Virus record (IMG/VR): IMGVR_UViG_3300042350_002797 | Location: 1-64,000 of that record | DNA length: 64,000 nucleotides | Strand: one strand, 5' to 3' | Shown here: positions 42,201 through 64,000 of the stretch, piece after piece | Layout of the letters: the number at the start of each line of letters is the position of its first letter | Position numbering within the stretch: position 1 is the first letter of the stretch | Program-made: the position numbers and the translations under genes | The notes under the pieces: generated by a model | The model's database searches: none | Told to the model about the DNA's origin: nothing | What the model saw: the letters and a program-made list of their open reading frames with translations, nothing else

Positions 42201-42677
42201 TCCACCGGTTACAGAAGCTGCTGCACCATTCCATTCAAAAATACCAAATTTACTTGCGGCTAAATCTAACCAATGTGTTCCATTTGCAGCATCGGCAGTT
42301 GGTTCGTCTGCTGATGCAGTTAGTGCGTCTAGATCTACATCAGCACGTACAACATATGCACGATTGCTAACGCCTAATAAGCTATAGGCCGCTTGTAAAC
42401 CATATTCATTTTGTTCTCCTGCATGTACAGGATTATTATTTGCATCGGTCTTGAATACCGGATCACCAAATGTATCCACTAAGTCTTTTTGACTTGTCAT
42501 TAGATAGACTGTGCCAGCATTTGCTTTTAAGGTTCCTGGTGCAGTTCCGGTGCCTGCGCCATTTAATTTATTCTGAGCAGAAGCCACAACAATTAAAGGA
42601 ACGGTTCCTGGTTCTGCTGGTGTGTAAAACGATTCGTCAATAACGCTGACTTCTACGCCTGGTGATGTTAATGCCAT
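39282..42677 (-). CDS. gp18: Contractile tail sheath protein (T4 gp18-like; start re-called to MALTSPGV)
   Basis: SPGVEVSVIDES N-terminus, PWFAPAGVRRG, INPLT, DRINVARL, FEPND, EFIYIP; AAGGAG SD before ATG 42677. Confidence 0.93.
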   Translation of the reverse strand: MALTSPGVEVSVIDESFYTPAEPGTVPLIVVASAQNKLNGAGTGTAPGTLKANAGTVYLMTSQKDLVDTFGDPVFKTDANNNPVHAGEQNEYGLQAAYSLLGVSNRAYVVRADVDLDALTASADEPTADAANGTHWLDLAASKFGIFEWNGAAASVTGGQKFTNKVPRIINALSQVDLGTGGPVASIGSIGDYAIVAADGTADTPALATTHPMTVWYKSRGNSEYGISAGTWVEVGSGDWAASWPVLTGTESNPTLSSGTIRINGVNIVFSGTTVSQLATAINAANVDGVKALITNGKVEITSNAEIGLNPEDSSQSNAINIQSISGTILTDIGITAGTYYAPELQISKHTQVPVWKLSPAAGQSVRPTGSVWIKTTTPNLGADLKLKRYNSATSLWEIVSAALYANGHSALYGLDSAGGGANLAAGTCYVQTNYTEDLGADATPTKANFKLFRRSATGSTSIKTSSVETGTFTSGSKTFTISESDAGSDILSSISVTWTAAGTSADAATLAAAINAAGFANIEAEVDVLNKVVISHAQGGDFRLVDVTDSTLTQAGFVAYVYEPSSPSFGTGTANLQSVPAGDSVHIGGFIATLWHPLVYVANVDAPGSLTEDGTLWYNSVIDEVDILIHDGTSWVGYKFGSGGNPYTGTDAAGPIVSATKPETQSDGTSALVTGDLWIDTSDLENFPTIYKYNASIPSGNKWVLVDTSDQTSEDGILFADARWSVTGEDSDTASTISDLLGSEYIDPDAPDPALYPRGMLLWNTRRSGFNVKRFVRNYIDTTDTNGRFGDEAMTSYYPHRWVTESPNQADGTASLGRKSQRAVVVRALQALVNSNQQIRDEESRVFNLIACPGYPELIGELITLNYDRGLTAFVVGDTPPRLTSDATSLLSWASNENGATEDNDVGAVSFDEYMAMFYPWGFTSDNFGNNVVVPPSHMMLRTIALNDQVAYPWFAPAGVRRGGITNATSVGYVTSEGEFTSVSLNTGQRDTLYSQKINPLTFLTGTGLVNYGQKTRSRSTSALDRINVARLVVYLRRQLNALAKPYIFEPNDKITRDEIKAAVESLMLELVGQRAIYDYIVVCDESNNTPSRIDRNELYIDIAIEPVKAIEFIYIPLRLKNTGEIASLG

Positions 42678-42784
42678 CTGAATCTCCTTGGAGTTTTGTT
42701 CAGTAGTATTTATTGTCAAAACCAAAAATTAACTGGTTATAAGTAGTAGAAAAGGGATAAAAAAGGTGTGGTATAAATAAAATT

Positions 42785-47655: not shown

Positions 47656-48086
47656 AAGATTCGATTGAATGCTCGGGTGCATTTATTTTTGCAAGATCGA
47701 CTCGCAGATTTTTGTTTCTACAAAAGCGTCACGGAAAGCACAGTGATAACTGGGTGCTAGTCGGAGGCACTAACAATCAGGGAGAGACTATTTTTCAAGG
47801 TTTACAAAGAGAAATAGAAGAAGAATTAGGACATGTTCCTGATATTTTAAAAACAATACCTTTAGAAAAATTCGTAAGTAATGATAGCCTTTTCAATTTT
47901 CATACATTTTTTTGTCTAGTAGAAAATGAATTTATTCCTATTTTAAGTGACGAACATCAAGCATGGGGATGGTTTCAATTAGATTCGCCTCCTAAACCTT
48001 TACATAAGGCATTGGATCTTAGTCTTCGCAATAAAATAATTCAGACTAAGATCCAATCAATCATAGATATTTCTGACAGTCTTTAA
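47637..48086 (+). CDS. Nudix hydrolase (start re-called to ATG 47637)
   Basis: Nudix box GGTNNQGETIFQGLQREIEEELG. Confidence 0.88.
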   Translation: METRTIKDSIECSGAFIFARSTRRFLFLQKRHGKHSDNWVLVGGTNNQGETIFQGLQREIEEELGHVPDILKTIPLEKFVSNDSLFNFHTFFCLVENEFIPILSDEHQAWGWFQLDSPPKPLHKALDLSLRNKIIQTKIQSIIDISDSL

Positions 48087-51000: not shown

Positions 51001-54000
51001 CAATTCCTATAATTTTTATTCTACTACCAATTTGTAATCCATGATCAACATCATCCATTACAAAAGTAATATCCGATCCTATAGTTACATCTTCTGCTGT
51101 AGCACTTTGAATGTTTACACTAGGTGCAAACAAAGCGCCTGTACAGTAATTTACACCTTTACCTGATTGATAACGAATATATTTTTTACTCATACGAATC
51201 GCTTGCGAACCGTGCTGTGGACCGCCTGTGCCTAACTGTACACCACCATCATATGGTCGATGTACAAAGTATGCATCAGATCGTGTATAAATTGTTCCGG
51301 TAAGAGCAACTGCTGTATCAACAGTTCCAGCAGTTCTTGCTGTATACCTTAAACTTGTTACAGAAGGAACTTGCTCTACAAAAAATGGCCCTGCTGCTAA
51401 TGAATGATTAGATCCGGCGCTGGTTATCCGTGTTGTTATACTTGCTCCTGGAAGTAATCCATGAGCTGTAGAAAAACTAACCTCTATTAACGCTATTCCA
51501 CTATAATTTAAAGTTGTACTTGTTGGAATAGTTGCTGTTGTTACACTGCTTAATAAAAGAACAGAATAAAATGATATGCTACTACCTAATGTAGCTGTTC
51601 CAGTTACTACGGCTGCTGAACTCACTCCAGACCCACTTATTCCTGATACCGAGATAATTAAGTCGTTAGTCGGACTGGTGCCTCCTAAACTTGTTCCTAG
51701 AATTAGTATTCTATTTCCTACTCTATAATTTGTTCCAGCCGCAGAGACTGCACTAACTGTATAAGATCCCGCAGATTTACTAATAGTAAATTGTGCTCCT
51801 GATCCATTATTAGCTACGTTATTTGCGGTTAAAGATGTAAATGTAGCATCAGTGCCTACAGCGTTACCGTCATAGCTAAATGACACAATCGATCCGCTTA
51901 CACCTAAAGTTATCACAGTAATTTCTAAATCATTAGCAGGACTAGCGCCACCTAAGTTTGTACCTAAAATTGTAATTACATCACCAATATTATAATCAAT
52001 ACCAGAATTATTCAAAGAAACGGCATAAGTACCTGCTGAAGAATCGCCTAAATCACTGCGTAGAATATTCCAAGTAGCACCTGTTCCTGTTGCTGTTGAA
52101 TCTATAGCTGTAACAAAATCTTGAGATACATTGCTATAAGTAAATGTTTTTACTACTGAAGTTCCAGTAAAAGTTATGGCAGTAATTTCACCTGCTCCTC
52201 CTATACTAGAGACTGTAACTGTTATATCATTAGTTGGACTTGTACCTTCTAAGAATGTACCTTCTATCGTAAGTTGGTCACCAATATTATAACCTGTTCC
52301 TGCATTGTTTATGACCACTGTATCATAAACGTTGTTAGTTCGTGTAACATTAAAGGTAGCACTAGTTCCTGAAGCTGCTACAGTAGTACCTGATACAGAC
52401 AAATAGCTAGCAGTGCCTCCGGTAAACCCTGTTGTTGTTGGTCCTGATAACGATACTGTTGATCCTACTATCTGAGTAACAAATATAGAAGTGCCTGAAC
52501 CATTATCAATAGCAGATCCTTCTACTATTCCAGAAACTGAATCAAATATAATACTAGTAGCACCTGAACTAACAGTTGTATTCACAGTCTGAGTTGCAAC
52601 TACACCACCAGATCCTATCACTCCTGATACTTGTGTACCAGTATCTATACCTGTTCCGGTTATTGGAGATCCAGTTGAAGGAGCGGTGCCAGTAAAGGCT
52701 AATCTATTAGAAGATATTGTTGTAGAAAAAACTGTATTAATTGTGCCAGTAGTACCATTAGAAAACACGCTGAATACTGGATTACCAACAGGTGCTCCTG
52801 TATAAAATTCTGCTTTTCTTAACTGTGTATATGTAGTTGCTAGCACTTGACCATTGCTACTTCCTACTTTAGCTGTGGCATAATAAGTAAATGTTGTTGC
52901 GCTAGGAACAGAATTCACTAAAAAAGTGCCTTCGGCTCTACTAAATCCTGTAATAGTATTTGCTAATGCTTTAATTGTAAAAGGCATACCTACTGTAAAT
53001 CCATGTGCTCCAGCAGTAGTCACTGTAATCAGACTAGAACCTACACCAGTAATTGCATTACCAGTACTAGCATCAGTAGTAACATTTAGTACAGAAGTAT
53101 CTGATCCTGGTACTTCATATGAACTAGGATATCCTCGTAAAAGACCAATGGCTTGCCATTTAGTAGGCTGTAGTCCATATTCAAAGTCAGCATCAAGCAT
53201 ACTCTGAGATGCAGCAACTCGCATACGTTCGATTGCATCTGTTCCGTAATCGTATGGCCGTACTCTAGTTTCCTTTTCTTCTACAAAAATTTGTATGTCA
53301 TCAAACGCTGTCGCAGTAGACGTATCTGCTTCTAAATAAATTGTAGTTACGTAATCTGCACGATCTCTAAATGCTCCAAAATTATCATCTTTATAGAAAA
53401 AATTACTAACATAACCTGTGTCTACTATAACCGATGCCCCTAAACTTGGTGCAGCAAAATTAAAAAGAACTGTATTGCTGGTCGAGTTAGTAATTAAAAG
53501 TAAGTCATTTATATCAAATTTGCCTAAAAGTCTAATTGTAGAAACTCCATTAGACAATACAGGTAAACTGCTTAATCCGTTTTGTAAAACTGCTATAAAA
53601 CTGTTAGATAATGATGTGATTCTTGATGCTGCGCCAGCTTCGCCAGCTGTTCCAGTAGTGACTTGAGCTTCCGTCACAGGACTTTGTTCTGAAGTATAAA
53701 CTGATTTAGTAATTACGTAGTTATTAATTAAATTACGTACAAATGTTTGTGCAGTAATTTCAGGTAACCGATCTCCGCTTAGTTGTGAAACACTGCCATT
53801 CCAGAATCTTGATGAAATGTAGTAAGTCTTAGCATTACCTCCATATCTTAAATCATGCAAGTAAGCATCTATAACTAATCCTATGTCTCGATCACATTTA
53901 GAGTCATCATACACATACCCAGCGTAATTGTAAACTGATGAAACAACAGCAGGTAGTGTAGACAAGCCGCCATCTATAACATCTATAATAATAGGTTTTA

Positions 54001-54583
54001 AATTGTTAGTGATAGAAGTAGCAACACCTGCTTCAGCATTTGCACCTGTTAAATTTTGAGTGCTTGTTACAGGACTTTGATCACTAGAGTAAGCTACACC
54101 TGGTAAGATATAATCTGTGATGATTGTAAATATTTGTTCAAATCCTAAAATTTCCTGGGTAGGACTTATGAGTTGTGCTACACCACCTTGCCAAAAATTT
54201 CTAGCAATGTCAATAGTTTTTTCGTTACCACCATATCTGACATCATATGTAATTGCATCGAGTAGCAATCCTGTGTCTCTTCTACACGAAGCTTCACTGT
54301 AAGTGTATCCGGACCAAATAGGGCCGCCGCCTGCTACTTGTGCTGCTACCCAAGCAATAATTTCATCTATTATGAATTGTTTATTATTAGTTAATCTTAG
54401 TACTGCGTTAGGATAAAGATTTTCAGCATTATCTTCTGTTATTCTAGCATTAATGTACGCAACTGCTTCTGCTTTAATAAATTCTTTATTTGATTGAATC
54501 AAAGCATATGCATTAGGATAGGCGTTAGAGGAGTATGATACCCCTGGTGAAAATACATAGTCGTCTATCTTTCTTTTTCCCAT
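48083..54583 (-). CDS. Very large virion structural / tail-fibre protein (2166 aa)
   Basis: Two helical repeats C.RD.GL..DA...D.RYGGN.KT, DADFEYGLQPTKW domain, long S/T/G-rich beta repeats. Confidence 0.75.
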   Translation of the reverse strand: MGKRKIDDYVFSPGVSYSSNAYPNAYALIQSNKEFIKAEAVAYINARITEDNAENLYPNAVLRLTNNKQFIIDEIIAWVAAQVAGGGPIWSGYTYSEASCRRDTGLLLDAITYDVRYGGNEKTIDIARNFWQGGVAQLISPTQEILGFEQIFTIITDYILPGVAYSSDQSPVTSTQNLTGANAEAGVATSITNNLKPIIIDVIDGGLSTLPAVVSSVYNYAGYVYDDSKCDRDIGLVIDAYLHDLRYGGNAKTYYISSRFWNGSVSQLSGDRLPEITAQTFVRNLINNYVITKSVYTSEQSPVTEAQVTTGTAGEAGAASRITSLSNSFIAVLQNGLSSLPVLSNGVSTIRLLGKFDINDLLLITNSTSNTVLFNFAAPSLGASVIVDTGYVSNFFYKDDNFGAFRDRADYVTTIYLEADTSTATAFDDIQIFVEEKETRVRPYDYGTDAIERMRVAASQSMLDADFEYGLQPTKWQAIGLLRGYPSSYEVPGSDTSVLNVTTDASTGNAITGVGSSLITVTTAGAHGFTVGMPFTIKALANTITGFSRAEGTFLVNSVPSATTFTYYATAKVGSSNGQVLATTYTQLRKAEFYTGAPVGNPVFSVFSNGTTGTINTVFSTTISSNRLAFTGTAPSTGSPITGTGIDTGTQVSGVIGSGGVVATQTVNTTVSSGATSIIFDSVSGIVEGSAIDNGSGTSIFVTQIVGSTVSLSGPTTTGFTGGTASYLSVSGTTVAASGTSATFNVTRTNNVYDTVVINNAGTGYNIGDQLTIEGTFLEGTSPTNDITVTVSSIGGAGEITAITFTGTSVVKTFTYSNVSQDFVTAIDSTATGTGATWNILRSDLGDSSAGTYAVSLNNSGIDYNIGDVITILGTNLGGASPANDLEITVITLGVSGSIVSFSYDGNAVGTDATFTSLTANNVANNGSGAQFTISKSAGSYTVSAVSAAGTNYRVGNRILILGTSLGGTSPTNDLIISVSGISGSGVSSAAVVTGTATLGSSISFYSVLLLSSVTTATIPTSTTLNYSGIALIEVSFSTAHGLLPGASITTRITSAGSNHSLAAGPFFVEQVPSVTSLRYTARTAGTVDTAVALTGTIYTRSDAYFVHRPYDGGVQLGTGGPQHGSQAIRMSKKYIRYQSGKGVNYCTGALFAPSVNIQSATAEDVTIGSDITFVMDDVDHGLQIGSRIKIIGIETFGYNGTYTVTEIINERQFKVLAQTVLANTTAVLGPNALMSTYQWHGATVRAGTHDDQNGLFFQYDGNDFAVVRRSSTQQLAGVVNITKDTNLMTGVNTRFRDQIKAGDRIVIKGMTHVVTRITSQTSMTVAPDYRGAVDAVASKICLVSDYVVKQQDFNIDRLDGTGPSGFNIDITKMQMIGMQWSWYAVGFIDFMLRGSDGNFIFFHRMRNSNVNTEAYMRTGNQPVRYEVHNESARDKLASSISALATSIPLVDARDFPNETAIVYIDNELISYNGKSGNTLLNCTRAASLTSFIAGSLRTFTAGPASTHEFNTGVILVSCTTSPIISHWGSAFLMDGLFDEDRGYIFSYASTGVSVSTTKQTAFLIRLAPSISNAIVGDLGERELLNRAQLLLKGIAITSDTGSGGIVVEGVLNPSNYPTDPSQISWGGLSSLAAGGQPSFAQIAPGGSVTWNSGSQTTAGATLQTDINGNLTVPNNSVFNRSSGSSFFYATQASWTSIGATTGSTINDGKYPSGTTITTISASSSPTATTIDQLTTGNVRLEFDISFGTNLYYARAFEWSNNVNPVSTVGMTINGGGFPSGTYVTNVSGPSSASGRTYYTLTMSASTFGASRDSNATFSLGGTYSNNLDNLYFTSSSWNNLPLDCSIVGATTNDATTFPTPRTINTINTGRSFAGITYTRVVFSGVAASISGSRTITFSHTPYYQVNTSLNSTSSVNAAANVQLSVRQSTGNTNFVFFTSASWTNLVNTNGAGVGTEVSIDSSLTITNFIGNGTTTVTGTIAATANVIGVGNRITISGATGTEQTKLNGTWTVATVGATTFTFVVSTSVVAGTLTTTLGTTTLLSDFPAGTRISNVSTEQTFNGTTYYRVQFNQTSISAQSPAEVITFRFGQPPYALPGETVFSFISQPGESGELDLAELKELTNTTLGGRGTYPNGPDVLAINVYKASGTTVNSNIILRWGEAQA

Positions 54584-54594
54584 TTATTTCTCCG

Positions 54595-55578
54595 TTATCC
54601 GCCTAATGCTATTGCTAAGGCGGCAGCTATATTGTCGACGTAATCTTTACGTGTTGCTTTAGATGCATCCGACGGTGCATCGTTGATTGTAACTTCGTCT
54701 ACTGTTATGTTTGTTGTAGATATGCTAGTTGCCGTTAAAGTTGTTATTGTACTAGTCGAAGCTGTTAGATCTGTGAATATAGCTTCGCCGGCTACTGTTT
54801 GACCAATATTAACATTATCAATAGTTCCTACGCTAGATGGATTTATAGTAATCGAGCCTGATACACCTGTAGGTGAAATATTGATAGTTGCATTATTACC
54901 AGAAAATGTTACATTATCGGCTACTTGTAAACTATTTAGATTGGCTAATCCGGTGGTAGCTACTGTAGTAAATGAGCCACTACTAGGAACTGTTGTTCCG
55001 ATGCTCATATTGTTAATTTCGCCTGGACTTCCTGTTTTATTAGTTATTGATATAACACCATCTAGAACAGTTAAATTATTTTGTCCAACTAATAAGTTAG
55101 TAGCAGTTAACGTGTCTGATACTTCAAATCCATATTCAGATTTTAGCGGACTTTGTATAATAGTAGTCGGTCCAGAATAAGGAGATAGTTCTCCTATAGT
55201 TTCTGTATAATTAGCTCTGAATATTAATTTTGCGCCTTGGAATTCTGTAGCTGCTGTAGCCAGTAAAGTTACATAACTGTTATTGACAGCTACAGAGAAT
55301 GTAGCAACATTAGTTGCTGTACCTACTCTTCCATAGTTTAAAATATTAACAGTATTAGGACTAGCTGTTAATAATATTTTTAAAGTTTCTTTTACATTGC
55401 TGCTATACTCTATAGTAATAGTATAGTCTGCACTAGAAAAATCGCCAACAAACCACCTATCTATTTCTGTATTGTTGAATACCTGAATCCACTTGCCTTT
55501 ATGAGACCAAGCAGTTCCAGACTTTATTCTTAAAGTTGAATTAGGGCCTTGACTAAAATAGTCCGAAAATGTTAACAT
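54595..55578 (-). CDS. Tail-fibre-associated structural protein
   Basis: S/T-rich, INNMSIG / IDNVNIG repeats, ATRKDYVD motif. Confidence 0.6.
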   Translation of the reverse strand: MLTFSDYFSQGPNSTLRIKSGTAWSHKGKWIQVFNNTEIDRWFVGDFSSADYTITIEYSSNVKETLKILLTASPNTVNILNYGRVGTATNVATFSVAVNNSYVTLLATAATEFQGAKLIFRANYTETIGELSPYSGPTTIIQSPLKSEYGFEVSDTLTATNLLVGQNNLTVLDGVISITNKTGSPGEINNMSIGTTVPSSGSFTTVATTGLANLNSLQVADNVTFSGNNATINISPTGVSGSITINPSSVGTIDNVNIGQTVAGEAIFTDLTASTSTITTLTATSISTTNITVDEVTINDAPSDASKATRKDYVDNIAAALAIALGG

Positions 55579-55632: not shown

Positions 55633-57447
55633 TTAAACATTAGCTATTTTAATTAATTTTCCGTGTTCAGGCAAATACAAGTATTCTATATCACTACGTA
55701 CTAGCGTATCAATAGCATCATCCAGTGTTTCGACTAACGGATCTCCACCTAGATTAAAGCTAGTGTTAAACAAAATAGGAATATTTGTTTTTTTGTAGAA
55801 TGCCGTAATTAGATTGTAAAAGTGATAGTTTTGATCTTCTGTTACTGTTTGAATTCGACAGGTACCGTCTACATGAATAATACTTGGTATTTTTTCATCT
55901 TTGCCAGGTTGACAATTTACAGCATACATCATATGAGGACTTTCATCTTTACCTCGTAGATCAAACCACTCGTGTACATGTTCTTTTAAAATAGTTCCTG
56001 CAAATGGTCTAAAATATTCTCTACGTTTTACTGCATTAACAAAATCTTTACCATCGGCATAAGTTGGGTCAAATAAAATACTACGATTTCCTAATGCTCT
56101 AGGACCGTTTTCACTACGTCCTTGGAATATAGTAACAATATTTTTACTAGTCAATAAATCAACTACATCTTCATAGGTAGCGTCTACTACTTCCCCGTCA
56201 AGAGGTTTAATTTTTTCAATTATTTCTTGTTCAGTATATGAATACACAGGTCCTAAGTATAGACTATTATCCTTTTGTTTTGTACTACTTTGCGACAATT
56301 GATGATAAAACATTAATGCAGCACCGATAGCAGTTCCTGCATCATTGCTGATTGGCTCTACATATAATTCGATGCCATCTTTACGTAATTGTTCCAAATA
56401 ATAATAATTTGCCACACAATTAAGACCGTAGCCTCCACTTAATACAACTTGTTTTTTTCCGGTAAGTTCTACAGCTTTATAAATTAATTTTAGTACTTGT
56501 TCTTGGCTTTGAGTTTGAACTGCGTATGCTAGATCTCTACGACTTTGTAAATGTGTAACATCTGTCTTCTCATCTAGAACTTGTTCATCTAAAAAATTAT
56601 ATAACTCTGAATTTACCTTAGCGCCATTGGGGTAATTAGGAACAATTAAATTTCTATTACTTAGAGAAAATTTACCTGAATCGTCAAACAATTTTGGAAA
56701 ACTATTATTTTCTTTTCCGTATGGAAACAACCCCATAGTTTTTCCTGCTTCTATACTAGAGAAACCACAAAACTCTGTTACAGCTTCATATACTTTTACT
56801 ATGCCTGCTCTATCTGAAAGTAAAGCTTCGTGTACTGAGTCTTTCTCTCCAAAAATTCCTGAATCTAAATTTAGATAATGAGCACCTAGCACAGTTTCGC
56901 TTGTACCATAATTTTTATAACGTGTTTTGAATGTAGAAGGATATTCACAATCAATAATACTTTCTACTTCCCAAACTGTCATTGGTTGATCGTTATAAGA
57001 AATATTGATAAAAGTGCCTGCACCGTCCACAATAAGACTAACAGCACTATCAAATCCTGATCTATAGAATGCACATGCACTGTGCAGCTTATGATGAATA
57101 AAACTTAAATCAATAACCTGAGGGTGTGCATATATGTTTTCTTTTCTACTAATTAATCCTAATTTTCTAGCCAAGCCAGTATAAACATCGTCGCCAGTGT
57201 AGTCTACTCTGCCTGCGGTTTCATTTAGTTTTTGAGTATGGGCAATTACAAGATAGTCGATCTTATCTGTGTATTCTAAAATTTTCATCATAGATGCATA
57301 AGGACCGCCGTCGTATTTGTGACGACTTAATCTTTCTTCTTCTATGCTAAAAACAATTTCGCCATCTTTTAACAAACAGACTCCTGAATTATGTCCTCTG
57401 GCGATAGCTGCTATATATCCGGTTTTCAATTGTGGCGTATTATTCAT
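55633..57447 (-). CDS. Full-length carbamoyltransferase (NodU/CmcH/TobZ family)
   Basis: EEERLSRHK, HHKLHSACAF, VDGAG, EAGKTMGL, SGGYGLNC, NDAGTAIGA, GPRALGNRS, RREYFRPFA, NTSFN. Confidence 0.92.
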   Translation of the reverse strand: MNNTPQLKTGYIAAIARGHNSGVCLLKDGEIVFSIEEERLSRHKYDGGPYASMMKILEYTDKIDYLVIAHTQKLNETAGRVDYTGDDVYTGLARKLGLISRKENIYAHPQVIDLSFIHHKLHSACAFYRSGFDSAVSLIVDGAGTFINISYNDQPMTVWEVESIIDCEYPSTFKTRYKNYGTSETVLGAHYLNLDSGIFGEKDSVHEALLSDRAGIVKVYEAVTEFCGFSSIEAGKTMGLFPYGKENNSFPKLFDDSGKFSLSNRNLIVPNYPNGAKVNSELYNFLDEQVLDEKTDVTHLQSRRDLAYAVQTQSQEQVLKLIYKAVELTGKKQVVLSGGYGLNCVANYYYLEQLRKDGIELYVEPISNDAGTAIGAALMFYHQLSQSSTKQKDNSLYLGPVYSYTEQEIIEKIKPLDGEVVDATYEDVVDLLTSKNIVTIFQGRSENGPRALGNRSILFDPTYADGKDFVNAVKRREYFRPFAGTILKEHVHEWFDLRGKDESPHMMYAVNCQPGKDEKIPSIIHVDGTCRIQTVTEDQNYHFYNLITAFYKKTNIPILFNTSFNLGGDPLVETLDDAIDTLVRSDIEYLYLPEHGKLIKIANV

Positions 57448-58385
57448 TATTTTTTCTTTTTATCTAAAATTGTATTAATAACGTAATCTTGAATTTCTGC
57501 GGTCATGGTCATAATATTTTCATGCTTTCGATCAATTCTTTCATCTACAGTTATTCTTATAGGACTATATTCTCTAGTGTCCTCACCCATGTCTAATATA
57601 TTAAAAAACGAGCAATTTGGGTAGCTGACATTAATAGGAAAAGTCGATCCCATTACTACAGTAGATTGCTTTCCTACGGCATACGCTAAATGTTGACCTA
57701 CACTGTCGCAGCCAAAAAAATGATTTGCATATTTGATTACTGCTGCCCACTGTCTTAAATTTAGATTTTCAGGCGCAGCAACATCATCTTTATATTTTTC
57801 TTCTCTTAGATCCAATTTAATTTCGCTCATCATAATCACAGCGTAATTATTTTCTTGTAGTTTTTTAATTAAAGCTTTGACATCTTTATATTCTATACTA
57901 CGGCTTGTAGTATCAACAAAGCTTTCGTCTATATATTGTATGCCTCTTCCAAAAGGCTGAAACACTATTACTTTTTCTTTTTTTAAAGTTTTTTTGACTT
58001 CTGATACTAGTTGTCTGCCTGTAACTAGTTCTTCTTTAGATAATAAAAGAGTAGGTTTTGGTAATTCTCTAATACCTTTTTTATTAATTTCTATATCAAA
58101 TGCTTGTGCCAAACTGCATTGCTGATTGTAGTATTCCCAAACTCTGTAAGGTTCAAGACTAATGATATCTTTATCTTTGAGCTTTTCTGCGAACAGATTT
58201 TTGTGCCATACATCATAAGTTCTTTTATCTAAAGTCGGGTGACCTTTATAAAATTCAGTGCCGCCTTCGCAAACTATAATAAAATCTGTATCCCCGGATT
58301 CTTGCTCGTATTTTTCAAAAGCAGGAATTGAACAAATAACACGACCGGCGCCGCCATTAATAAAAAATGCTTTAGATCTACTCAT
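57447..58385 (-). CDS. GT9 (heptosyltransferase)-like glycosyltransferase
   Basis: INGGAGRV N-terminus, FQPFG, FFGCDSVGQHLAYAVGK motif. Confidence 0.65.
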   Translation of the reverse strand: MSRSKAFFINGGAGRVICSIPAFEKYEQESGDTDFIIVCEGGTEFYKGHPTLDKRTYDVWHKNLFAEKLKDKDIISLEPYRVWEYYNQQCSLAQAFDIEINKKGIRELPKPTLLLSKEELVTGRQLVSEVKKTLKKEKVIVFQPFGRGIQYIDESFVDTTSRSIEYKDVKALIKKLQENNYAVIMMSEIKLDLREEKYKDDVAAPENLNLRQWAAVIKYANHFFGCDSVGQHLAYAVGKQSTVVMGSTFPINVSYPNCSFFNILDMGEDTREYSPIRITVDERIDRKHENIMTMTAEIQDYVINTILDKKKK

Positions 58386-58457: not shown

Positions 58458-59090
58458 TCAGTAGTATTTTGGAGGATTTGCTGGAAATGGAATTTTCCAA
58501 TGATCTATTCCGTCGTACGTAGTTTCTAGATTTCGTAACCAATCAATATAATCAGTCAACGCTTGACGTTCTTCGTCGGTATAATCATTGTTAGCTAGTG
58601 ATTGTTCCATAGCTCCAATCAACAATGTTGAACCTTGAATTACACTTTCTCTAGTAAGATTATGTGTTCTAAAACTTGGTCGAGTAAATTGACCGTTGAT
58701 ATATTTTATATCAAATGATTGATAATTTTGATCTATCGCGCCGCCAGAATAAGTATAGGTGTACGTACCTTTGTTGTCAGGTAGTGTCTCTTCATAGTCG
58801 GGTACGTCATCATTTTCATATTGATGTGTAATATAAGCAGCTTCAAATGTATGTTCGCTAGCATCAATAACTACAAAATCTGTTTCTGGATCATTGTCCA
58901 CTAACAGTTCGGTACGTAAGTCAGCTTGTGATTCGGCTGATGCAGCTACATATCTAATTTCTCCAGTGGGTGTATGTACACACAAAGCTAAAAATCTTGG
59001 TCCGAAGTATGTGGCTTGCACTGTTTTATTTAAATTTGTTGTTGTCTTATATGGCTCATCTGATAAAGCTATCGTAAAAAACTTACGCAT
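58458..59090 (-). CDS. Possible tail-fibre assembly chaperone-like protein
   Basis: C-terminal ALTDYIDWLRNL...WKIPFPANP resembles the Y..LRD.P..WP.P chaperone motif; follows the fibre genes. Confidence 0.5.
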   Translation of the reverse strand: MRKFFTIALSDEPYKTTTNLNKTVQATYFGPRFLALCVHTPTGEIRYVAASAESQADLRTELLVDNDPETDFVVIDASEHTFEAAYITHQYENDDVPDYEETLPDNKGTYTYTYSGGAIDQNYQSFDIKYINGQFTRPSFRTHNLTRESVIQGSTLLIGAMEQSLANNDYTDEERQALTDYIDWLRNLETTYDGIDHWKIPFPANPPKYY

Positions 59091-59112: not shown

Positions 59113-60093
59113 TTAACTAATAAATCTTATTCTAACTGCGCCCATACCGCCACGATAACCATTGTCTCTAACGCTGTCGCAAACACCAATCCCTGGAGCT
59201 CCCCACCCGTAAGGCATAAAAGATACACATCCAGTGGCTTCATAGCAGCCGCATGGTCTGTTACTAACCCAACAATAATTAGCCATACCAGCTGCGCCGG
59301 ATTGTGAATTAACACCTAATCCCATTTGTGCTCCGGTAAGTCCTTGGCCAGGAATTGGAGCTTCTGGAGCATCATCTCCGAATACATGATTAATCATAGG
59401 AGGACTAACACAACTCCATACACCACCAGGTCCTGGAATATGCATAAGGGTACAGCATCTTGATACAGCCATACCTGCACAACAATAAAAAGTAGCACAA
59501 CTTAATGCACCATTTACATTTACATCTCCACCAACAGCTGATGCCACAAATGTTTGGCTAGATCCTATATTACATATAGTGCCGCAAAAGCCGCTTAATC
59601 CATTGTTAGTGCCGCAATAGCCTGCTGCAATGAAACAACAGTATCCTCCATTGCTAGTAGAGCATATACTACAGCCGCCGCGGCCACCTTGGGCACAAAT
59701 ACAACCGTTAGTGCCGTTACCAAACCAGCATATACAAGTAGGTTCAGAACATCCTCTAAAATTTATAGTACTAGCATCACCGCAGGCAAATCCTATTGTT
59801 CCAGTAACATAGCAACCCGATGTAACACTGATACATTTCTTAGAATAAGCTGCTGCATTACCTGGTAAACCAAATCCGCAACAACACATACGAGCACTGC
59901 TGCCTCCTGCGCCCCATACTTCTATAATAGCAGTACCTGTTCCAGGAGCTCGCCAGCAAAATCCGCCGCAAAAATTAGTTCTTATATTACCAGGCGTAAA
60001 GGTATAAATCTCACCTTGATCTAAGTTTTCCTCTGTAAATGTTCCAGTTTGGTATAATCTTTGAGCTAACAGTGTTTTCAATTGTGTTGGCAT
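59113..60093 (-). CDS. Cys/Gly-rich tail-fibre-like protein, paralogue 3
   Basis: EVWGAGG, CCCG, CAQGGRGG, GGDVN, GGMGAVRIRFIS; about 30 Cys by my count. Confidence 0.7.
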   Translation of the reverse strand: MPTQLKTLLAQRLYQTGTFTEENLDQGEIYTFTPGNIRTNFCGGFCWRAPGTGTAIIEVWGAGGSSARMCCCGFGLPGNAAAYSKKCISVTSGCYVTGTIGFACGDASTINFRGCSEPTCICWFGNGTNGCICAQGGRGGCSICSTSNGGYCCFIAAGYCGTNNGLSGFCGTICNIGSSQTFVASAVGGDVNVNGALSCATFYCCAGMAVSRCCTLMHIPGPGGVWSCVSPPMINHVFGDDAPEAPIPGQGLTGAQMGLGVNSQSGAAGMANYCWVSNRPCGCYEATGCVSFMPYGWGAPGIGVCDSVRDNGYRGGMGAVRIRFIS

Positions 60094-60095
60094 TC

Positions 60096-61076
60096 TTAAC
60101 TCGCAATAAATTTTATTCTAATTGCTCCTGAGCCGCCTCTAGTAGCAAAATCGCATACGCTGGCACAAGGACTCGGAGCCATTCCTGGAAATCCTGGTGG
60201 AAAATGAGAGACACAGCCGTGTGCTTGATAGCAACCACACCCATATGCACTTGCATAACAGTTTGATTCGTGCGGTAAACCGTTATGAGGATGTCTGCTA
60301 GCAGCATTTAGTGCATTAAGATATTGATGGATGCCTTGACCTGAAGTATTAGCGAATTCATTGGTGTTTTCTGTGGCAAAAACTAACACTCCGCCATTTT
60401 TAGAAAAATATCCTGCAGGTGTTCTGACAAAATATGTTGTGCTACAAGTACAGTTTGGTACACAACCAAAAAATCCTGCACAACTGAACCCTCCTCGACA
60501 ATTTACATCGCCGCCGAATGCTTCTGCACAACAACTAGCTATAGAAGCACCTGCGCCAAAATTACAAATCACTCCGCAATTGGTATTAACTACTGTTCCG
60601 CAAAATCCTGCATTTAAAAAACAGCAGAACAAACTAGTTCCTGAAGAACAAAAACTAACGCCGCCGCGGCCTCCTTGGGCACAAATACAAGAATTGCCTG
60701 CTGTGCTTTGATAACAAACTCCTGTGGGCTCTGAACATCCTCTAAAACAGGCAGTTGATGGATTTCCGCAAGCAAGTCCAATACAGCCAAGAACTGTACA
60801 TCCTGTAACTACATTAAAAGTTTTTTTACTATACGCACCTGGATTTCCTGGGATTCCGCCGCCGCAGCAGGCTATCATTCCTCCGCTGCCGCCAGCACCC
60901 CATACTTCTAAAACTACTTGTCCTGCTGACGGTGCTGTCCAGCATACACATGCAAATTGCTTAGTTCGAACATTTGGTTCTGCAAACATCCAAATTTGTC
61001 CTTTTTCAAGGTTTATCTCAGTGTCTGCAATACTGCTTAATTTATTAGTTACTAAATTTCTAAATGATGTTGGCAT
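60096..61076 (-). CDS. Cys/Gly-rich tail-fibre-like protein, paralogue 2
   Basis: Same motifs and length (326 aa) as neighbours. Confidence 0.7.
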   Translation of the reverse strand: MPTSFRNLVTNKLSSIADTEINLEKGQIWMFAEPNVRTKQFACVCWTAPSAGQVVLEVWGAGGSGGMIACCGGGIPGNPGAYSKKTFNVVTGCTVLGCIGLACGNPSTACFRGCSEPTGVCYQSTAGNSCICAQGGRGGVSFCSSGTSLFCCFLNAGFCGTVVNTNCGVICNFGAGASIASCCAEAFGGDVNCRGGFSCAGFFGCVPNCTCSTTYFVRTPAGYFSKNGGVLVFATENTNEFANTSGQGIHQYLNALNAASRHPHNGLPHESNCYASAYGCGCYQAHGCVSHFPPGFPGMAPSPCASVCDFATRGGSGAIRIKFIAS

Positions 61077-61078
61077 TA

Positions 61079-62077
61079 TTAACTCGCAATAAACTTAATT
61101 TTCACAGCGGCGTTGCCTCCTTGCATGCCATTATCTCTTACACCGGCTTCAAATACTGCGTTATGTCCACCAAATCCTGGCGGACTCATAGATGTGCATC
61201 CCCACTGCTCATAACAGCCGCAGCCTCTGTTACTGTTCCAACAACTAACAAATGGAATGCCTCCGGCTGGTTTTCTGCTCACTGCATTCTGCATGTACAT
61301 TTGCTGATGACGTCCTGTGCCTGAGTAGTCACTGAATTCATTAGTATATTCGTGAAATACTTCTAATACAACACCCTTTTCTGAAATAATTCCTGACGGT
61401 CCTGGAATATAAGCTGTTGTGCAACAAGCAGCATTTGCATTGCATCCAAACCATCTTATACAACTGAAGTGTCCGCAACAATTTACGTCTCCGCCGTAGC
61501 CGCAGGCAATTTGTAAAGTTGATGTTATGTTGCAGATTAATCCGCAGTTAGCATTTACTGGTCCTGTGCCACAGTATCCTGCTGCGAGATAACAGCACCA
61601 AGCACTGCTACCAGTAGAACAAAAACTTATGCCGCTACGACCGCCTTGAGCACATAAACAACCGTTATTGCCTGTAGTTGATGATCTAAACCAACATCCA
61701 AATGCCCTAGGGCCGCAGCCACTATCACACAGGGCTGCAGGATTTCTTGTAGCACTGTGTGCTTCTATACAACCACAAACAAATGCAGAACAAGACTCAG
61801 CAGCAGTGATTGTAAAAGATTTTTTAACATATGCGCCTGCATTTCCTGGCATACCAAATCCGCAACAACACATACGAGAACCGCCGCCGCCGCCGCCCCA
61901 CATTTCAATAACTACTGTACCAGCTTGTCCTCCTGGTGGGCACCATCTAAAAATATTAGGAGTAACTGATGTTGCTGGTGTATACACCCATATTTTTCCC
62001 TGTTCTAAATCATTTTCTGACGGCCCGACTATGGTGTCGTTTTTCGTACTAACTAACGTTCTTAATGATGTAGGCAT
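61079..62077 (-). CDS. Cys/Gly-rich tail-fibre-like protein, paralogue 1
   Basis: Same motifs, 332 aa. Confidence 0.7.
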   Translation of the reverse strand: MPTSLRTLVSTKNDTIVGPSENDLEQGKIWVYTPATSVTPNIFRWCPPGGQAGTVVIEMWGGGGGGSRMCCCGFGMPGNAGAYVKKSFTITAAESCSAFVCGCIEAHSATRNPAALCDSGCGPRAFGCWFRSSTTGNNGCLCAQGGRSGISFCSTGSSAWCCYLAAGYCGTGPVNANCGLICNITSTLQIACGYGGDVNCCGHFSCIRWFGCNANAACCTTAYIPGPSGIISEKGVVLEVFHEYTNEFSDYSGTGRHQQMYMQNAVSRKPAGGIPFVSCWNSNRGCGCYEQWGCTSMSPPGFGGHNAVFEAGVRDNGMQGGNAAVKIKFIAS

Positions 62078-62089
62078 TTCTTTTTCCGA

Positions 62090-62422
62090 TTAAGCAGATG
62101 CCACTATCCAACCATATGTTGCACCACTATAGATAAGTGTAACAATAGCGCCATTAGTATCAATAGTTAAGTCATCCGATACGTTTTGAATTTTAGCACC
62201 ATTTCGCCCTACTGTAATATTGTTTGTGCCTGCTGTTGCGGACACATCTATAATTTGTATAGTGTCGTTGACTAGTACACCACCTACTGCTGGCAATGTT
62301 ATGGTAATTGCACCAGATGTTGTATTGCATAATACTCTATCATTAACTACTGCACTATAATTCGTAGATGTTTCACGAAAGGTTGCCGATGCTGTTCCAG
62401 TAGTTGTAATATATCTTCCCAT
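62090..62422 (-). CDS. Small tail-associated structural protein
   Basis: ITITLP, IQIID, NNITVGRNG, LIYSGATYGW beta module seen in phage fibre genes. Confidence 0.6.
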   Translation of the reverse strand: MGRYITTTGTASATFRETSTNYSAVVNDRVLCNTTSGAITITLPAVGGVLVNDTIQIIDVSATAGTNNITVGRNGAKIQNVSDDLTIDTNGAIVTLIYSGATYGWIVASA

Positions 62423-62442
62423 TTATTTCCCCTGACTGATTA

Positions 62443-62763
62443 TCATGTTGTTAAAGTTTCTATGCCGTATGCCATTGCACTTACGTTTGCAACAGATGAT
62501 CTGACAACGACTAATTTGTTAGCATCTATAACTATTCCTGAACGTTCTAGAACTCCTTTTGCACCAACTTCTGTATCATATTCGATATATTCTGCATCTG
62601 TTGGCGTAGAAGATGATGCTACTGCTAATCTTATTAGCGCAGGAACGTTACCTCTATTACAAACCGATACTGTAACAACCGAAAATGTGCTAGCCGGAAC
62701 AGTGTATAAAGTTGCATCTGTAGCTGCTGTTAAATTTGCTGTTCCTAATCTTCCTGTAGCCAT
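62443..62763 (-). CDS. Small tail-associated structural protein
   Basis: LYTVPA...VSVCNR beta-sandwich pattern; GGAG SD. Confidence 0.6.
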   Translation of the reverse strand: MATGRLGTANLTAATDATLYTVPASTFSVVTVSVCNRGNVPALIRLAVASSSTPTDAEYIEYDTEVGAKGVLERSGIVIDANKLVVVRSSVANVSAMAYGIETLTT

Positions 62764-62774
62764 TTAAATCTCCG

Positions 62775-64000
62775 TTAATTAAATAAGGTGTGTGCAAGAA
62801 TATATCCGTCAACGCCGCTTTTAAAATTCATCTTAGTATTTATATTTATTTGGGCACCGGTGGTTGTTGTGATAGTATCACCAGAAATAAACACAATTCC
62901 TGCTGTTACACTATTTACGTTCAACGAACTAGCTCCGCTACCAATTTGAGCACTAATATAAGCTTTAATTGCTCTTTGAGTTGGTACAATAGCATCACTA
63001 TCTGCTGTAAAGAATGGATCTGTGCTAAATTCGCTGATAGCTGCGCCGCCTCCACCTAGAGCTACTGATCCTAACTGTAATTCTTGCAAGCCTGCTATAC
63101 TAAATGCATCAGCATTTAATGTAGCTATACCTGTGCTTTGTTCTACGCTAAAAATGTCGCCGACTCTAAAATTACCATCTTGATCGGTACTAGTATAAAA
63201 TACTCTACCGCCACCAAATTCATTAATTTCTTTAGTAGGGTCAGGATCAATTAATGGAGTATCAGGATAATTGGTGTTGGCAAAGTTACCTGTTCCAATA
63301 TCTAAGAAGTCGTGTCCTGTTAATCGAACCTGACTATAACGAATTCTAATTTCGGTAGTTTCTTCGTGTTCAGGCGATTCTGCTACACCTAATCCTGGGC
63401 TTAATTGCAAGACCGCAGAATAATAATCTCCTTGTTGAGTGAGTTGTGATACACTGACTAGCTTGTATACTACGTCATTGATGCCAGTGATTCTAACATT
63501 AGATCCTGCTTTTGGAATTCCTGTTAATCGTTTGAAAGCTATGTATGTACCTGTCTGATATAAGTCTGCATATCCGTTACCAGTCACTGTTGCCGAAGCA
63601 GTTACATAATTTGTTCCTCTATTAGTAAATGTTGGATTGGCTAACACTCCTTTGCCTTTTCTAACTTGTGTGCTCGCTTCGCTGATATTATTAGGATCAA
63701 CAATAGTCATAGTAGGGGCACTTGCATATCCTGAGCCTGGTTCAATTATTCTAATAGATGTAATTTTTTCATCATTTACAACTGCTCTAGCCTTAGTAGT
63801 AGATCCAGTTAATACACTCGATGCTACTGTACCTGCTGCGCCAGCTTGAACTGCGGCCCAGACGCCAGTTTCATTTGAATTTCCAAAAGTAATTGCACTA
63901 TATCCGTTAGCACTGGTACTCATTGTGCGTGTAGTCCAGTTAATACCATCTTCTGATGTTGCTGCGGCAGTTGTACTACTCACAGCAAAGAACACACCTT
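62775..64000 (-). CDS. Large tail/baseplate structural protein, 5' part outside window
   Basis: GSGYASAP repeats, SQVRLTGHDFLDIGTG, STDQDGNFRVG; frame open to window end. Confidence 0.7.
   Translation of the reverse strand, partial: GVFFAVSSTTAAATSEDGINWTTRTMSTSANGYSAITFGNSNETGVWAAVQAGAAGTVASSVLTGSTTKARAVVNDEKITSIRIIEPGSGYASAPTMTIVDPNNISEASTQVRKGKGVLANPTFTNRGTNYVTASATVTGNGYADLYQTGTYIAFKRLTGIPKAGSNVRITGINDVVYKLVSVSQLTQQGDYYSAVLQLSPGLGVAESPEHEETTEIRIRYSQVRLTGHDFLDIGTGNFANTNYPDTPLIDPDPTKEINEFGGGRVFYTSTDQDGNFRVGDIFSVEQSTGIATLNADAFSIAGLQELQLGSVALGGGGAAISEFSTDPFFTADSDAIVPTQRAIKAYISAQIGSGASSLNVNSVTAGIVFISGDTITTTTGAQININTKMNFKSGVDGYILAHTLFN

What the first reader, a model, noticed from the sequence alone, without database searches (positions are those of the whole stretch)
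59113..62077. Three tandem ~330-aa paralogues with about 10% cysteine
All begin MPT, share E.NL(D/E).G.I(W/Y), E(V/M)WG.GG, CCCG, CAQGGR.G, CC..AG(Y/F)CG, GGDVN, GCGCY-like and end I(R/K)FI(A)S, separated by only 2 bp; the middle regions diverge strongly. About 30 Cys per chain, with CC and CCC clusters, is extreme for proteins folded in a reducing cytoplasm. Options: a heterotrimeric fibre tip held by many metal ions or disulfides, or a scaffold for Cys-directed modification by the adjacent enzymes. A chaperone-like gene follows immediately.
Basis: partly seen in the sequence, partly recalled or inferred. Interest (0 to 1): 0.6.

Follow-up and report, generated by a model that had tools for sequence, protein, structure and literature searches.

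The report
Cysteine-rich triplet of phage fibre-tip proteins
Three neighbouring genes of a 364-kb lake-water phage encode cysteine- and glycine-rich versions of a known tail-fibre tip fold, probably forming one three-part receptor-binding tip; the same module sits unannotated in marine cyanophages such as P-SSM2.

Summary
Three minus-strand genes (61079-62077, 60096-61076, 59113-60093) lie 2 bp apart and encode 332/326/326-aa paralogues with 29/31/31 Cys. The genome mean is 1.2% Cys.

The Cys are not noise: 24 Cys columns are at least 79% conserved over 199 homologues.

An AlphaFold2 model (pLDDT 90) matches the TNF-like plus glycine-rich domain of the cyanophage Pam3 tail fibre gp24 (Z 14.8). 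It also matches a Bxb1 tail-tip protein (Z 12.1) and ALK/LTK (Z 8-10). Syntenic cyanophage homologues reach Pfam PF21722 Gly_rich_2; the window proteins do not.

The triplet is conserved: 70 of 81 related loci have exactly three copies, and the copies form clades by position. The surrounding module is fixed: fibre, two small proteins, the triplet, a 210-aa protein, a GT9-like enzyme, a carbamoyltransferase.

A three-chain prediction gives a cyclic heterotrimer (0.82 against 0.02 for controls). Cys lie almost wholly outside that interface.

My best reading is a pseudo-threefold fibre tip. The role of the cysteines (disulfides, metal or modification) could not be decided without coordinates.

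Verdict: a new variant of a known kind.

The parts
62775..64000 (-). C-terminal part of a 1975-aa tail-fibre gene. It runs on to genome position 68702, beyond the window.
   Evidence: phrog_9851 tail fibre E 6e-53. Full ORF 62775-68702 in the genome. Present upstream of the triplet in 71 of 81 loci.
62443..62763 (-). Small conserved protein s106 (106 aa), resembling a segment of tail-fibre proteins.
   Evidence: phrog_11338 tail fibre E 5e-11. Found in 75 of 81 loci at the same position. One DNA contig and one RNA contig skip about 307-318 nt here.
62090..62422 (-). Small conserved protein s110 (110 aa), resembling a domain found inside long tail-fibre and tail-spike proteins.
   Evidence: phrog_4302, phrog_9648 and others, E down to 4e-18. 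Found in 75 of 81 loci, ending 13-48 nt before the first paralogue.
61079..62077 (-). Paralogue 1 (P0004, 332 aa, 29 Cys): Cys/Gly-rich TNF-like plus glycine-rich fibre-tip subunit.
   Evidence: Falls in the position-1 clade. Chain 1 of the predicted trimer.
60096..61076 (-). Paralogue 2 (P0005, 326 aa, 31 Cys): the subunit that was modelled.
   Evidence: AF2 pLDDT 90.3. 7ypx_A Z 14.8, 9d93_Qb Z 12.1, ALK/LTK Z 8-10. Falls in the position-2 clade.
59113..60093 (-). Paralogue 3 (P0006, 326 aa, 31 Cys).
   Evidence: Falls in the position-3 clade. It was the scored partner in the predicted trimer.
58458..59090 (-). Conserved acidic 210-aa protein: an N-terminal beta domain plus two long C-terminal helices. 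Candidate fibre-assembly chaperone.
   Evidence: Found in 72 of 81 loci, 2-26 nt after the triplet. AF2 pLDDT 96.9. No PDB fold match. Nearest named Atlas clusters by features are Phage_tail_APC and Caudo_TAP at 0.89-0.91.
57447..58385 (-). GT9-like (heptosyltransferase-like) glycosyltransferase.
   Evidence: PF01075 E 2.4e-4, below the cut-off. TIGR02201 E 1e-5, below the cut-off. Atlas clusters are named ADP-heptose:LPS heptosyltransferase. Found in 72 of 81 loci.
55633..57447 (-). TobZ/GdmN/NodU-type O-carbamoyltransferase.
   Evidence: PF16861 E 3e-57 and PF02543 E 5e-28. PDB 7xb6 E 9e-61, also GdmN and TobZ. Found in 70 of 81 loci.
54595..55578 (-). Conserved 327-aa protein of unknown function that ends the module.
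   Evidence: No Pfam, PHROG or NCBIfam match. Found in 63 of 81 loci at the same distance.

Best explanation
The three genes encode subunits of a tail-fibre tip, that is, a receptor-binding protein. They are of the Pam3 gp24 type: a short N-terminal helix, a TNF-like beta-sandwich and a glycine-rich lattice domain.

The genes are translationally coupled (stop, 2 nt, start), so the three products are made in about equal amounts. They most likely assemble head to tail into one pseudo-threefold heterotrimer. In that trimer the N-terminal strand (about residues 21-43) of each chain packs on the Cys-poor middle region (about residues 224-271) of the next.

The roughly 24 conserved cysteines lie inside each subunit, in the glycine-rich part. 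I infer that they brace that part, most probably as intrachain disulfides formed once the particle is in oxic lake water.

The 210-aa protein downstream probably helps folding and assembly, as gp25 does for gp24 in Pam3. The conserved GT9-like enzyme and carbamoyltransferase probably act on the same structure or on its receptor.

Shown here: the paralogy, the Cys conservation, the fold match, the conserved triplet and the conserved module.
Inferred: virion location, heterotrimer, disulfides, chaperone role and enzyme targets.
For: Fold:
- AF2 pLDDT 90.3, pTM 0.86.
- Foldseek top hits are the Pam3 fibre, the Bxb1 tail tip and ALK/LTK.
- VIA-align gives 7ypx_A Z 14.8 (192 aa, rmsd 3.2), 9d93_Qb Z 12.1 and ALK/LTK Z 8-10. 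The next unrelated hit is Z 4.4.
- BFVD and Atlas neighbours are viral glycine-rich-domain proteins, PF21722 and PF12810.

Sequence bridge:
- The family HMM hits the three syntenic S-CAM1 copies at 29-78 bits.
- S-CAM1 copy 3 and S-SSM7 copies 1 and 3 pass the Pfam PF21722 cut-off over positions 7-225 of 226.

Context:
- The triplet lies directly after a 1975-aa fibre gene.
- Gene order is fixed in about 70 of 81 loci.

Triplet:
- 70 of 81 loci have exactly three copies.
- The position labels need 3-4 changes on the tree, against about 44 when shuffled.
- The S-SSM7 triplet clusters by genome, so three copies were reached more than once, or are kept alike by gene conversion.

Trimer: ipSAE 0.82, best control 0.02, at least 67% of contacts shared between runs, partner pLDDT at least 76.

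Cys:
- 24 columns are at least 79% conserved.
- Only 1-3 Cys per chain lie in the predicted interface.

Precedents: in Pam3, disulfides tie fibres to the baseplate, and gp25, encoded next to gp24, chaperones it (PMC9942802, PMC9608196).

Expression: short contigs from three RNA libraries lie on all three genes.
Against: - There are no virion proteomics for any member. I found nothing in the papers searched.
- The window proteins fail Pfam PF21722 and have no sequence match in the PDB.
- The complex predictor also scores close cousins of a true partner highly, so homotrimers would probably pass too. They were not tested.
- Loci with one or two copies exist, so a heterotrimer is not required by the fold.
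- Cys counts are as often odd as even (111 against 88), so not every Cys can be in an intrachain pair.
- The genome has no Erv, DsbA or thioredoxin gene. It has only one distant glutaredoxin.
- The RNA libraries may carry DNA.
Confidence: 0.6

Rival explanations
1. The fold and virion role are the same, but each paralogue forms its own homotrimer. The phage then carries three kinds of fibre tip with different receptor specificities, widening or hedging its host range.
For: - Pam3 gp24 is a homotrimer (PMC9608196).
- Related loci with one or two copies exist.
- The paralogues differ most in loop regions and in the 225-270 region.
- The predictor cannot tell cousins from true partners.
Against: - The count of three is strikingly constant (70 of 81 loci).
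- Positions are orthologous.
- Spacing is 2 bp, with nearly identical junctions.
- Three copies were reached separately in S-SSM7.
- The most divergent region is the predicted subunit interface rather than a free tip.
Confidence: 0.3
2. The conserved cysteines bind metal ions (Zn, Fe or Cu), or form clusters, that hold the glycine-rich lattice. In this reading they are not disulfide-bonded.
For: - The proteins are made in a reducing cytoplasm, and the genome has no thiol oxidase.
- There are CC, CxC and CxxxC spacings.
- Cys counts are often odd.
- From my own knowledge: the T4 fibres gp12 and gp37 hold metal ions, though through His.
Against: - His is rare (1.9%) and is depleted among the residues that replace Cys (0.3-fold).
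- Replacements are mostly Arg, Thr, Ser, Ala and Asn, not typical metal ligands.
- There is no match to any metal-binding family.
- The particle lives in oxic lake water.
Confidence: 0.2
3. The triplet is above all a substrate. The neighbouring GT9-like transferase and O-carbamoyltransferase would decorate its Ser, Thr or Cys residues with (carbamoylated) sugar, giving a glycosylated adhesin. This could hold together with the best explanation.
For: - The two enzymes follow the triplet in about 70 of 81 loci.
- Among cultured phages, the GT9-like gene and the Cys-rich proteins occur in the same cyanophages: S-CAM1, S-CAM3, S-SSM7, S-SSM6a, Sf-FS3, P-SSM2, P-SSM5.
- In those phages ADP-heptose pathway genes follow.
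- From my own knowledge: GT9-related heptosyltransferases such as TibC and Aah glycosylate adhesins, and some mycobacteriophages glycosylate virion proteins.
Against: - The GT9 match is below the curated cut-offs and there is no PDB sequence match.
- This genome has no SIS/GmhA gene.
- The enzymes could instead alter host envelope sugars.
- No direct evidence of modification exists.
Confidence: 0.2
4. The proteins are not virion parts. They would be Cys-rich intracellular or secreted proteins, for example metal-sequestering or host-acting.
For: The Cys content alone recalls metal-binding proteins. No proteomic proof of virion location exists.
Against: - The fold matches solved fibre and tail-tip proteins, well above the next hits.
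- The genes sit inside a fibre module.
- There is no metallothionein-like composition: the proteins are 326-332 aa, rich in beta strand, and contain aromatic residues.
Confidence: 0.04

Closest known systems
Cyanophage Pam3 tail fibre gp24 with its chaperone gp25 (PDB 7ypx, 7yfw; PMC9608196, PMC9942802)
   Same: - TNF-like sandwich plus glycine-rich lattice: Z 14.8 over 192 residues.
- A short N-terminal helix.
- A predicted trimer.
- A separate gene immediately downstream with a beta domain plus C-terminal helices.
- A phage in which cysteines matter for fibre attachment.
   Different: - No detectable sequence similarity.
- Three diverged paralogues instead of one gene.
- About 30 Cys per chain inside the domain. 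In the Pam3 papers the only fibre Cys discussed is Cys28 in the helix.
- The N-terminal helix is far shorter.
- The downstream protein has no fold match to gp25.
- The host phage is a 364-kb jumbo phage with long fibres, not a minimal myophage.
Pfam PF21722 Gly_rich_2 and the many viral 'glycine-rich domain-containing proteins'
   Same: - The same fold class.
- The shared motif pattern 'W..P.G....E.WG.GG.G ... G.PG..G.Y ... G.V.I'.
- The syntenic cyanophage homologues pass the model.
   Different: - The window proteins do not reach E <= 1 against Pfam.
- Cysteine richness and the fixed triplet are not features of the Pfam family as described.
Mycobacteriophage Bxb1 tail-tip protein (PDB 9d93, chains Qa and Qb)
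   Same: The fold: Z 12.1 over 190 residues, 20% identity in the structural alignment. It is part of a tail tip.
   Different: It comes from a siphophage of a Gram-positive-type host. There is no sequence-level match. I did not read the paper on that structure, so its stoichiometry is not compared.
T-even type gp38 adhesin (Salmonella phage S16, PDB 6F45), as described in PMC9608196
   Same: A small protein encoded right after the distal long-fibre gene. Its glycine-rich motifs form a polyglycine-II lattice that carries the receptor-binding loops.
   Different: - gp38 is a monomer capping the gp37 trimer, with a beta-helix middle domain.
- It did not appear among the fold matches here.
- It has no Cys richness.
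ALK/LTK extracellular TNF-like plus glycine-rich domain (PF12810)
   Same: The overall two-part fold: Z 8-10 over about 150 residues.
   Different: It is an animal receptor kinase ectodomain that binds a cytokine. The match is partial only, and there is no Pfam hit.

Membership tests
Pfam PF21722 Gly_rich_2 | Score at or above the Pfam gathering cut-off (24.3 bits) | tested here: not met
   There are no Pfam families at E <= 1 for P0004-P0006. The cut-off is met by the syntenic homologues S-SSM7 copy 1 (24.9 bits), S-SSM7 copy 3 (26.4 bits) and S-CAM1 copy 3 (40.4 bits).
Pam3 gp24-type fibre (TNF-like plus glycine-rich domain) | TNF-like beta-sandwich joined to a glycine-rich lattice domain | tested here: met
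   The AF2 model has pLDDT 90.3. 7ypx_A gives Z 14.8, rmsd 3.2, 192 aligned residues over model residues 25-326. The next unrelated fold is Z 4.4.
Pam3 gp24-type fibre (TNF-like plus glycine-rich domain) | Trimeric assembly | tested here: inconclusive
   The three-chain prediction scores 0.82 against 0.02 for the best control. This is a prediction only, and homotrimers were not tested.
Pam3 gp24-type fibre (TNF-like plus glycine-rich domain) | Long N-terminal helical bundle that docks the fibre to the baseplate | tested here: inconclusive
   Only one helix is predicted (residues 5-17), with pLDDT 60-70. It is conserved among the paralogues. The docking partner is unknown.
Pam3 gp24-type fibre (TNF-like plus glycine-rich domain) | Present in the virion | not testable with these tools
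   I found no proteomic data for any member.
Tail-fibre assembly chaperones (Tfa, Caudo_TAP PF02413, Phage_tail_APC PF16778, Pam3 gp25) - for the 210-aa neighbour | Profile or fold match to a known fibre chaperone | tested here: inconclusive
   There is no Pfam or NCBIfam hit and no PDB fold match with Z above 7. The only support is a language-model neighbour score of 0.89-0.91, with 164 shared features, below the 170 guide value.
T-even gp38 adhesin | Monomer with a beta-helix middle domain and a three-layer PGII sandwich | tested here: not met
   It is not among the Foldseek or VIA matches. The predicted assembly is a trimer of TNF-like domains.
ALK_LTK_GRD PF12810 | Pfam model match | tested here: not met
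   There is no Pfam hit. Fold similarity is partial only, Z 8-10.
GT9 heptosyltransferases - for the 312-aa neighbour | Score above the curated cut-off of PF01075 or TIGR02201 | tested here: not met
   PF01075 scores 20.9 bits against a cut-off of 22. TIGR02201 scores 24.5 bits against a cut-off of 170. Atlas neighbours carry the name.

The most novel reading that the evidence does not exclude
The triplet is an obligate 1:1:1 heterotrimeric receptor-binding tip. Its cysteine-laced glycine lattice is chemically finished after translation, either by a dense, defined network of about 12 disulfides per chain formed without any phage oxidase, or by sugar and carbamoyl groups added by the two co-inherited enzymes. 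The whole fibre, tip, chaperone and enzyme cassette moves as one unit between freshwater jumbo phages and marine cyanomyoviruses.
Probability: 0.15. Interest if true: 0.75.

Novelty: new variant of a known kind. Interest (0 to 1): 0.55.

Why it matters
Every database searched here names these proteins 'hypothetical'. That includes the model cyanophages P-SSM2, S-SSM7 and S-CAM1, and PHROGs lists the family (phrog_4205) as unknown function.

Placing them in the Pam3 gp24 / Gly_rich_2 fibre-tip class gives a testable candidate for the receptor-binding protein of these phages, and of a recurrent lake-water jumbo phage.

A pseudo-symmetric heterotrimer built from three conserved paralogues would be an unusual way to build a fibre tip. 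The known tips of this fold are homotrimers or monomers.

The cysteine load is the unexplained part: about 24 conserved Cys in a domain otherwise known for glycine, made in a reducing cytoplasm. It gives a concrete case for asking how phage particles acquire disulfides or metals.

The strict linkage to a GT9-like enzyme and a carbamoyltransferase suggests that genes filed as 'auxiliary metabolic' or 'LPS' genes in cyanophages may in fact serve the fibre.

Tried and rejected
- BLAST against the 50,697 phage records with the DNA and with two of the proteins found nothing. This was a false blank: the syntenic S-CAM1 genes are homologous by HMM. Low-complexity filtering is my guess for the cause.
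- A profile search of the PDB by sequence found nothing.
- The idea of a marine cyanophage origin is rejected for this genome:
  - there is no psbA;
  - the terminase is nearest the PA5oct and Atu_ph07 jumbo phages;
  - the runs that hold it are lake water.
- Cys as a mere small-residue stand-in for Gly in the lattice is rejected: Gly is depleted (0.38-fold) among the residues that replace Cys.
- Inferring disulfide pairs from joint gain and loss of Cys columns led nowhere. Correlated sets exist (for example 182/183, 86/88, 185/194), but they follow paralogue and lineage, so no pairing can be read from them.
- Model coordinates are not exposed to scripts, so S-S distances could not be measured.
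- A phage-encoded thiol oxidase was sought and not found. Erv, DsbA and thioredoxin are absent, and one glutaredoxin lies 220 kb away. The Erv search had no positive control.
- Fold search of the 210-aa neighbour gave only generic helical hairpins with Z below 7.
- Promoter and terminator scans were at chance level.
- A slower MAFFT alignment timed out twice. hmmalign was used instead.
Full report
**1. The observation**

The window carries three back-to-back ORFs on the minus strand: 61079-62077 (332 aa, P0004), 60096-61076 (326 aa, P0005) and 59113-60093 (326 aa, P0006). At both junctions the stop codon is followed by two bases and then the ATG, within an almost identical stretch of about 30 nt.

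The proteins align over their full length at 42-48% identity, with 97 invariant columns. The most distant pair still gives a composition-adjusted BLASTP E-value of 4e-65, so this is true paralogy and not shared composition.

The proteins hold 29, 31 and 31 cysteines (8.7-9.5%) and 15-18% glycine. Over the 248 ORFs of at least 150 aa in the genome, mean Cys is 1.2% (sd 1.3%), and these three are the three highest. The local rise in G+C (43.5% against 36%) fits the Gly and Cys codons.

The genome has exactly these three copies.

**2. The cysteines are conserved**

A word-indexed search found 277 relatives, all called hypothetical. An exhaustive profile search over 1.84 billion representatives found only 195, so this is a small, compact family of stand-alone proteins of about 320-340 aa.

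Over 199 full-length homologues, mean Cys is 9.2% (range 5.6-11.7%), and 24 Cys columns are at least 79% conserved.

Where a conserved Cys is lost, it is replaced mainly by Arg, Thr, Ser, Ala or Asn. Gly (0.38-fold) and His (0.30-fold) are depleted among replacements. So the Cys are neither stand-ins for Gly nor interchangeable with the commonest alternative metal ligand.

Cys counts are odd in 111 proteins and even in 88, so not all of them can be in intrachain pairs.

**3. The fold**

Pfam and NCBIfam give nothing for the three proteins. PHROGs gives phrog_4205, function unknown.

With a 113-sequence alignment, AlphaFold2 gives a confident model of P0005 (pLDDT 90.3, pTM 0.86). Its fold matches are:

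| Match | Score |
|---|---|
| Cyanophage Pam3 tail fibre, 7ypx_A | Z 14.8, rmsd 3.2, 192 residues |
| Mycobacteriophage Bxb1 tail-tip protein, 9d93_Qb | Z 12.1 |
| ALK/LTK TNF-like plus glycine-rich ectodomains | Z 8-10 |
| Next unrelated chain | Z 4.4 |

These come from Foldseek and VIA-align 2.

Predicted-structure libraries agree. BFVD lists S-CAM3 and P-SSM2 hypothetical proteins, Syn9 'Gp38' and dozens of 'glycine-rich domain-containing' viral proteins. The ESM Atlas lists viral clusters, one with PF21722 Gly_rich_2, and bacterial PF12810 clusters.

There is also a sequence bridge. The family HMM hits the three syntenic S-CAM1 proteins (29-78 bits). S-CAM1 copy 3 and S-SSM7 copies 1 and 3 pass Pfam's cut-off for PF21722 over almost the whole model.

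According to the Pam3 papers, gp24 is a homotrimeric fibre. [quoted passage not shown] In the virion the fibres are tied to the wedge by disulfides (PMC9942802).

**4. Context and spread**

The window is the first 64 kb of a 364,554-bp IMG/VR virus record, rated complete by CheckV.

It is a T4-related jumbo myophage. It encodes a sheath stabiliser, a 1147-aa sheath, a tube protein, a terminase, UvsX and helicases. Its terminase is closest to the Pseudomonas phage PA5oct group (56%) and to Atu_ph07. It has no psbA. Near-identical DNA recurs in at least 17 lake-water metagenome runs.

Yet the fibre-module genes find their nearest cultured relatives in marine cyanomyoviruses (S-CAM1 55%).

In S-CAM1, S-SSM7 and P-SSM2 the same place in the same gene order holds three, three and two Cys/Gly-rich proteins respectively, with 8-12% Cys.

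Among 81 loci with a family hit (78 of the 80 fetched IMG/VR loci, two further IMG/VR contigs that hold the window's own sequence, and S-CAM1), the order is kept in about 70, all on one strand:
1. fibre
2. s106
3. s110
4. the triplet
5. the 210-aa protein
6. the GT9-like enzyme
7. the carbamoyltransferase
8. the 327-aa protein

Among cultured phages, the GT9-like gene and the Cys-rich proteins occur in the same set of cyanophages.

**5. Three is not an accident**

Exactly three tandem copies are found in 70 of 81 loci. Eight loci have two and three have one, some of these cut by contig ends.

On a tree of 169 copies, the labels 'first', 'second' and 'third' need only 3-4 changes each, against about 44 when shuffled. 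A more careful tree of 81 rows agrees. The triplication is therefore old and its order is kept.

All three copies are under similar constraint, with mean column entropy 1.22-1.36.

The three S-SSM7 copies and the two P-SSM2 copies cluster by genome (99% support). Either multiplication happened again in those lineages, or the copies are homogenised there. These are long branches, so I hold this loosely.

**6. Assembly**

A three-chain prediction with orthologue alignments for each chain gave ipSAE 0.82 in three runs. The best of three controls gave 0.02, the runs shared at least 67% of contacts, and the partner's pLDDT was at least 76. In the tool's calibration this mark was reached by 58 of 80 solved complexes and 2 of 110 mismatched pairs, and those counts hold only roughly here.

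The contacts are cyclic: residues 21-43 of one chain lie on about residues 224-271 of the next. Only 1, 1 and 3 cysteines fall in the interface.

The prediction supports a trimer. It cannot tell a heterotrimer from three homotrimers, because close cousins of a true partner also pass. The case for a heterotrimer rests on the constant count, the kept order and the coupled translation.

**7. The neighbours**

*The 210-aa protein.* It folds with pLDDT 96.9 into a beta domain followed by two long helices. It has no match in the PDB beyond generic helical hairpins. Its nearest named clusters by language-model features are tail assembly chaperone families (0.89-0.91). 'Chaperone-like' is thus a lead backed by position and architecture, and is not a finding.

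*The 312-aa protein.* It is GT9-like, below the curated cut-offs.

*The 604-aa protein.* It is a clear TobZ/GdmN-type O-carbamoyltransferase.

In the cyanophages, ADP-heptose pathway genes follow. This genome has no SIS/GmhA gene.

**8. Cysteine chemistry**

The chemistry of the cysteines could not be settled. Joint gain and loss of Cys columns follows paralogue and lineage, so it says nothing about pairing.

The genome has no Erv, DsbA or thioredoxin gene, only a glutaredoxin 220 kb away. The Erv search had no positive control.

I favour intrachain disulfides formed after release into oxic water. The reasons are that the Cys lie inside the extracellular-facing domain, His is scarce, and Pam3 shows that cyanophage tail proteins do carry disulfides. 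Metal binding and enzymatic modification remain open.

**9. Expression**

Short contigs (150-340 nt, 97-100% identical) from three metatranscriptome libraries lie on all three genes and their neighbours. This is compatible with transcription in lakes. Because such libraries can carry DNA, and contigs show no strand, it is weak evidence.

**10. Verdict**

This is a real, conserved feature. It is a cysteine-rich, triplicated branch of the known TNF-like plus glycine-rich fibre-tip fold, most likely forming a pseudo-threefold receptor-binding tip.

It is a new variant of a known kind. The triplet architecture, the cysteine load and the linkage to two sugar-modifying enzymes are the new and still unexplained parts.

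Noticed in passing
window 1-64000 (whole genome G000, 364,554 bp): The record is a complete-rated jumbo myophage from lake water. Its terminase is nearest the PA5oct, Atu_ph07 and Phosso jumbo phages (56-49% identity). Its fibre module, however, is nearest marine cyanomyoviruses (S-CAM1 55%). This suggests the fibre cassette is exchanged between very different phage lineages. The host is unknown, and there is no psbA.
   Followed up: partly
window 62423-62743: One DNA contig (run X17) and one RNA-library contig (run X18) skip 307-318 nt, covering almost the whole 106-aa gene s106. What lies between the two sides is not known. It may be a variant lacking or replacing this small fibre-like gene.
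   Followed up: no
window 58458-59090: The 210-aa acidic protein after the triplet gives one of the most confident models seen here (pLDDT 96.9). Even so, it has no fold match in the PDB above generic helical hairpins. Its N-terminal beta domain was not searched alone.
   Followed up: partly
L001 13223-13576, L002 13352-13708, L003 18021-18422 (S-CAM1, P-SSM2, S-SSM7): In the cultured cyanophages, the same cluster that holds the Cys-rich proteins also holds a gene annotated 'cysteine dioxygenase', next to ADP-heptose pathway genes and 2OG-Fe(II) oxygenases. Whether that cupin has anything to do with the Cys-rich proteins is untested. I did not search this genome for a homologue.
   Followed up: no
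window 39282-42725 and 48083-54583; genome 62775-79688: Several structural genes are unusually large: a 1147-aa tail sheath, a 2166-aa virion structural protein, and a run of four fibre-sized ORFs of 1975, 1238, 1121 and 1031 aa upstream of the triplet.
   Followed up: no
window 61077: One RNA-library contig carries an extra A in the 2-nt spacer between paralogues 1 and 2 (depth 3.1 of 11). It is a strain variant or an error. It would change the spacing but not either reading frame.
   Followed up: no
window 60361-60711, 60724-61092, 61668-62093 (+ strand): Open frames of 116-141 aa lie antisense to the three genes. They are rich in Pro, Gln and Ala, as expected opposite Gly and Cys codons. 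They have no homologue support and are best read as artefacts.
   Followed up: partly
L050-L053, L059, L061, L070, L073, L076: A sub-lineage of related phages carries only one or two copies of the family in otherwise the same module, and these copies form their own clade. These are natural test cases for whether one paralogue alone can build the tip.
   Followed up: partly
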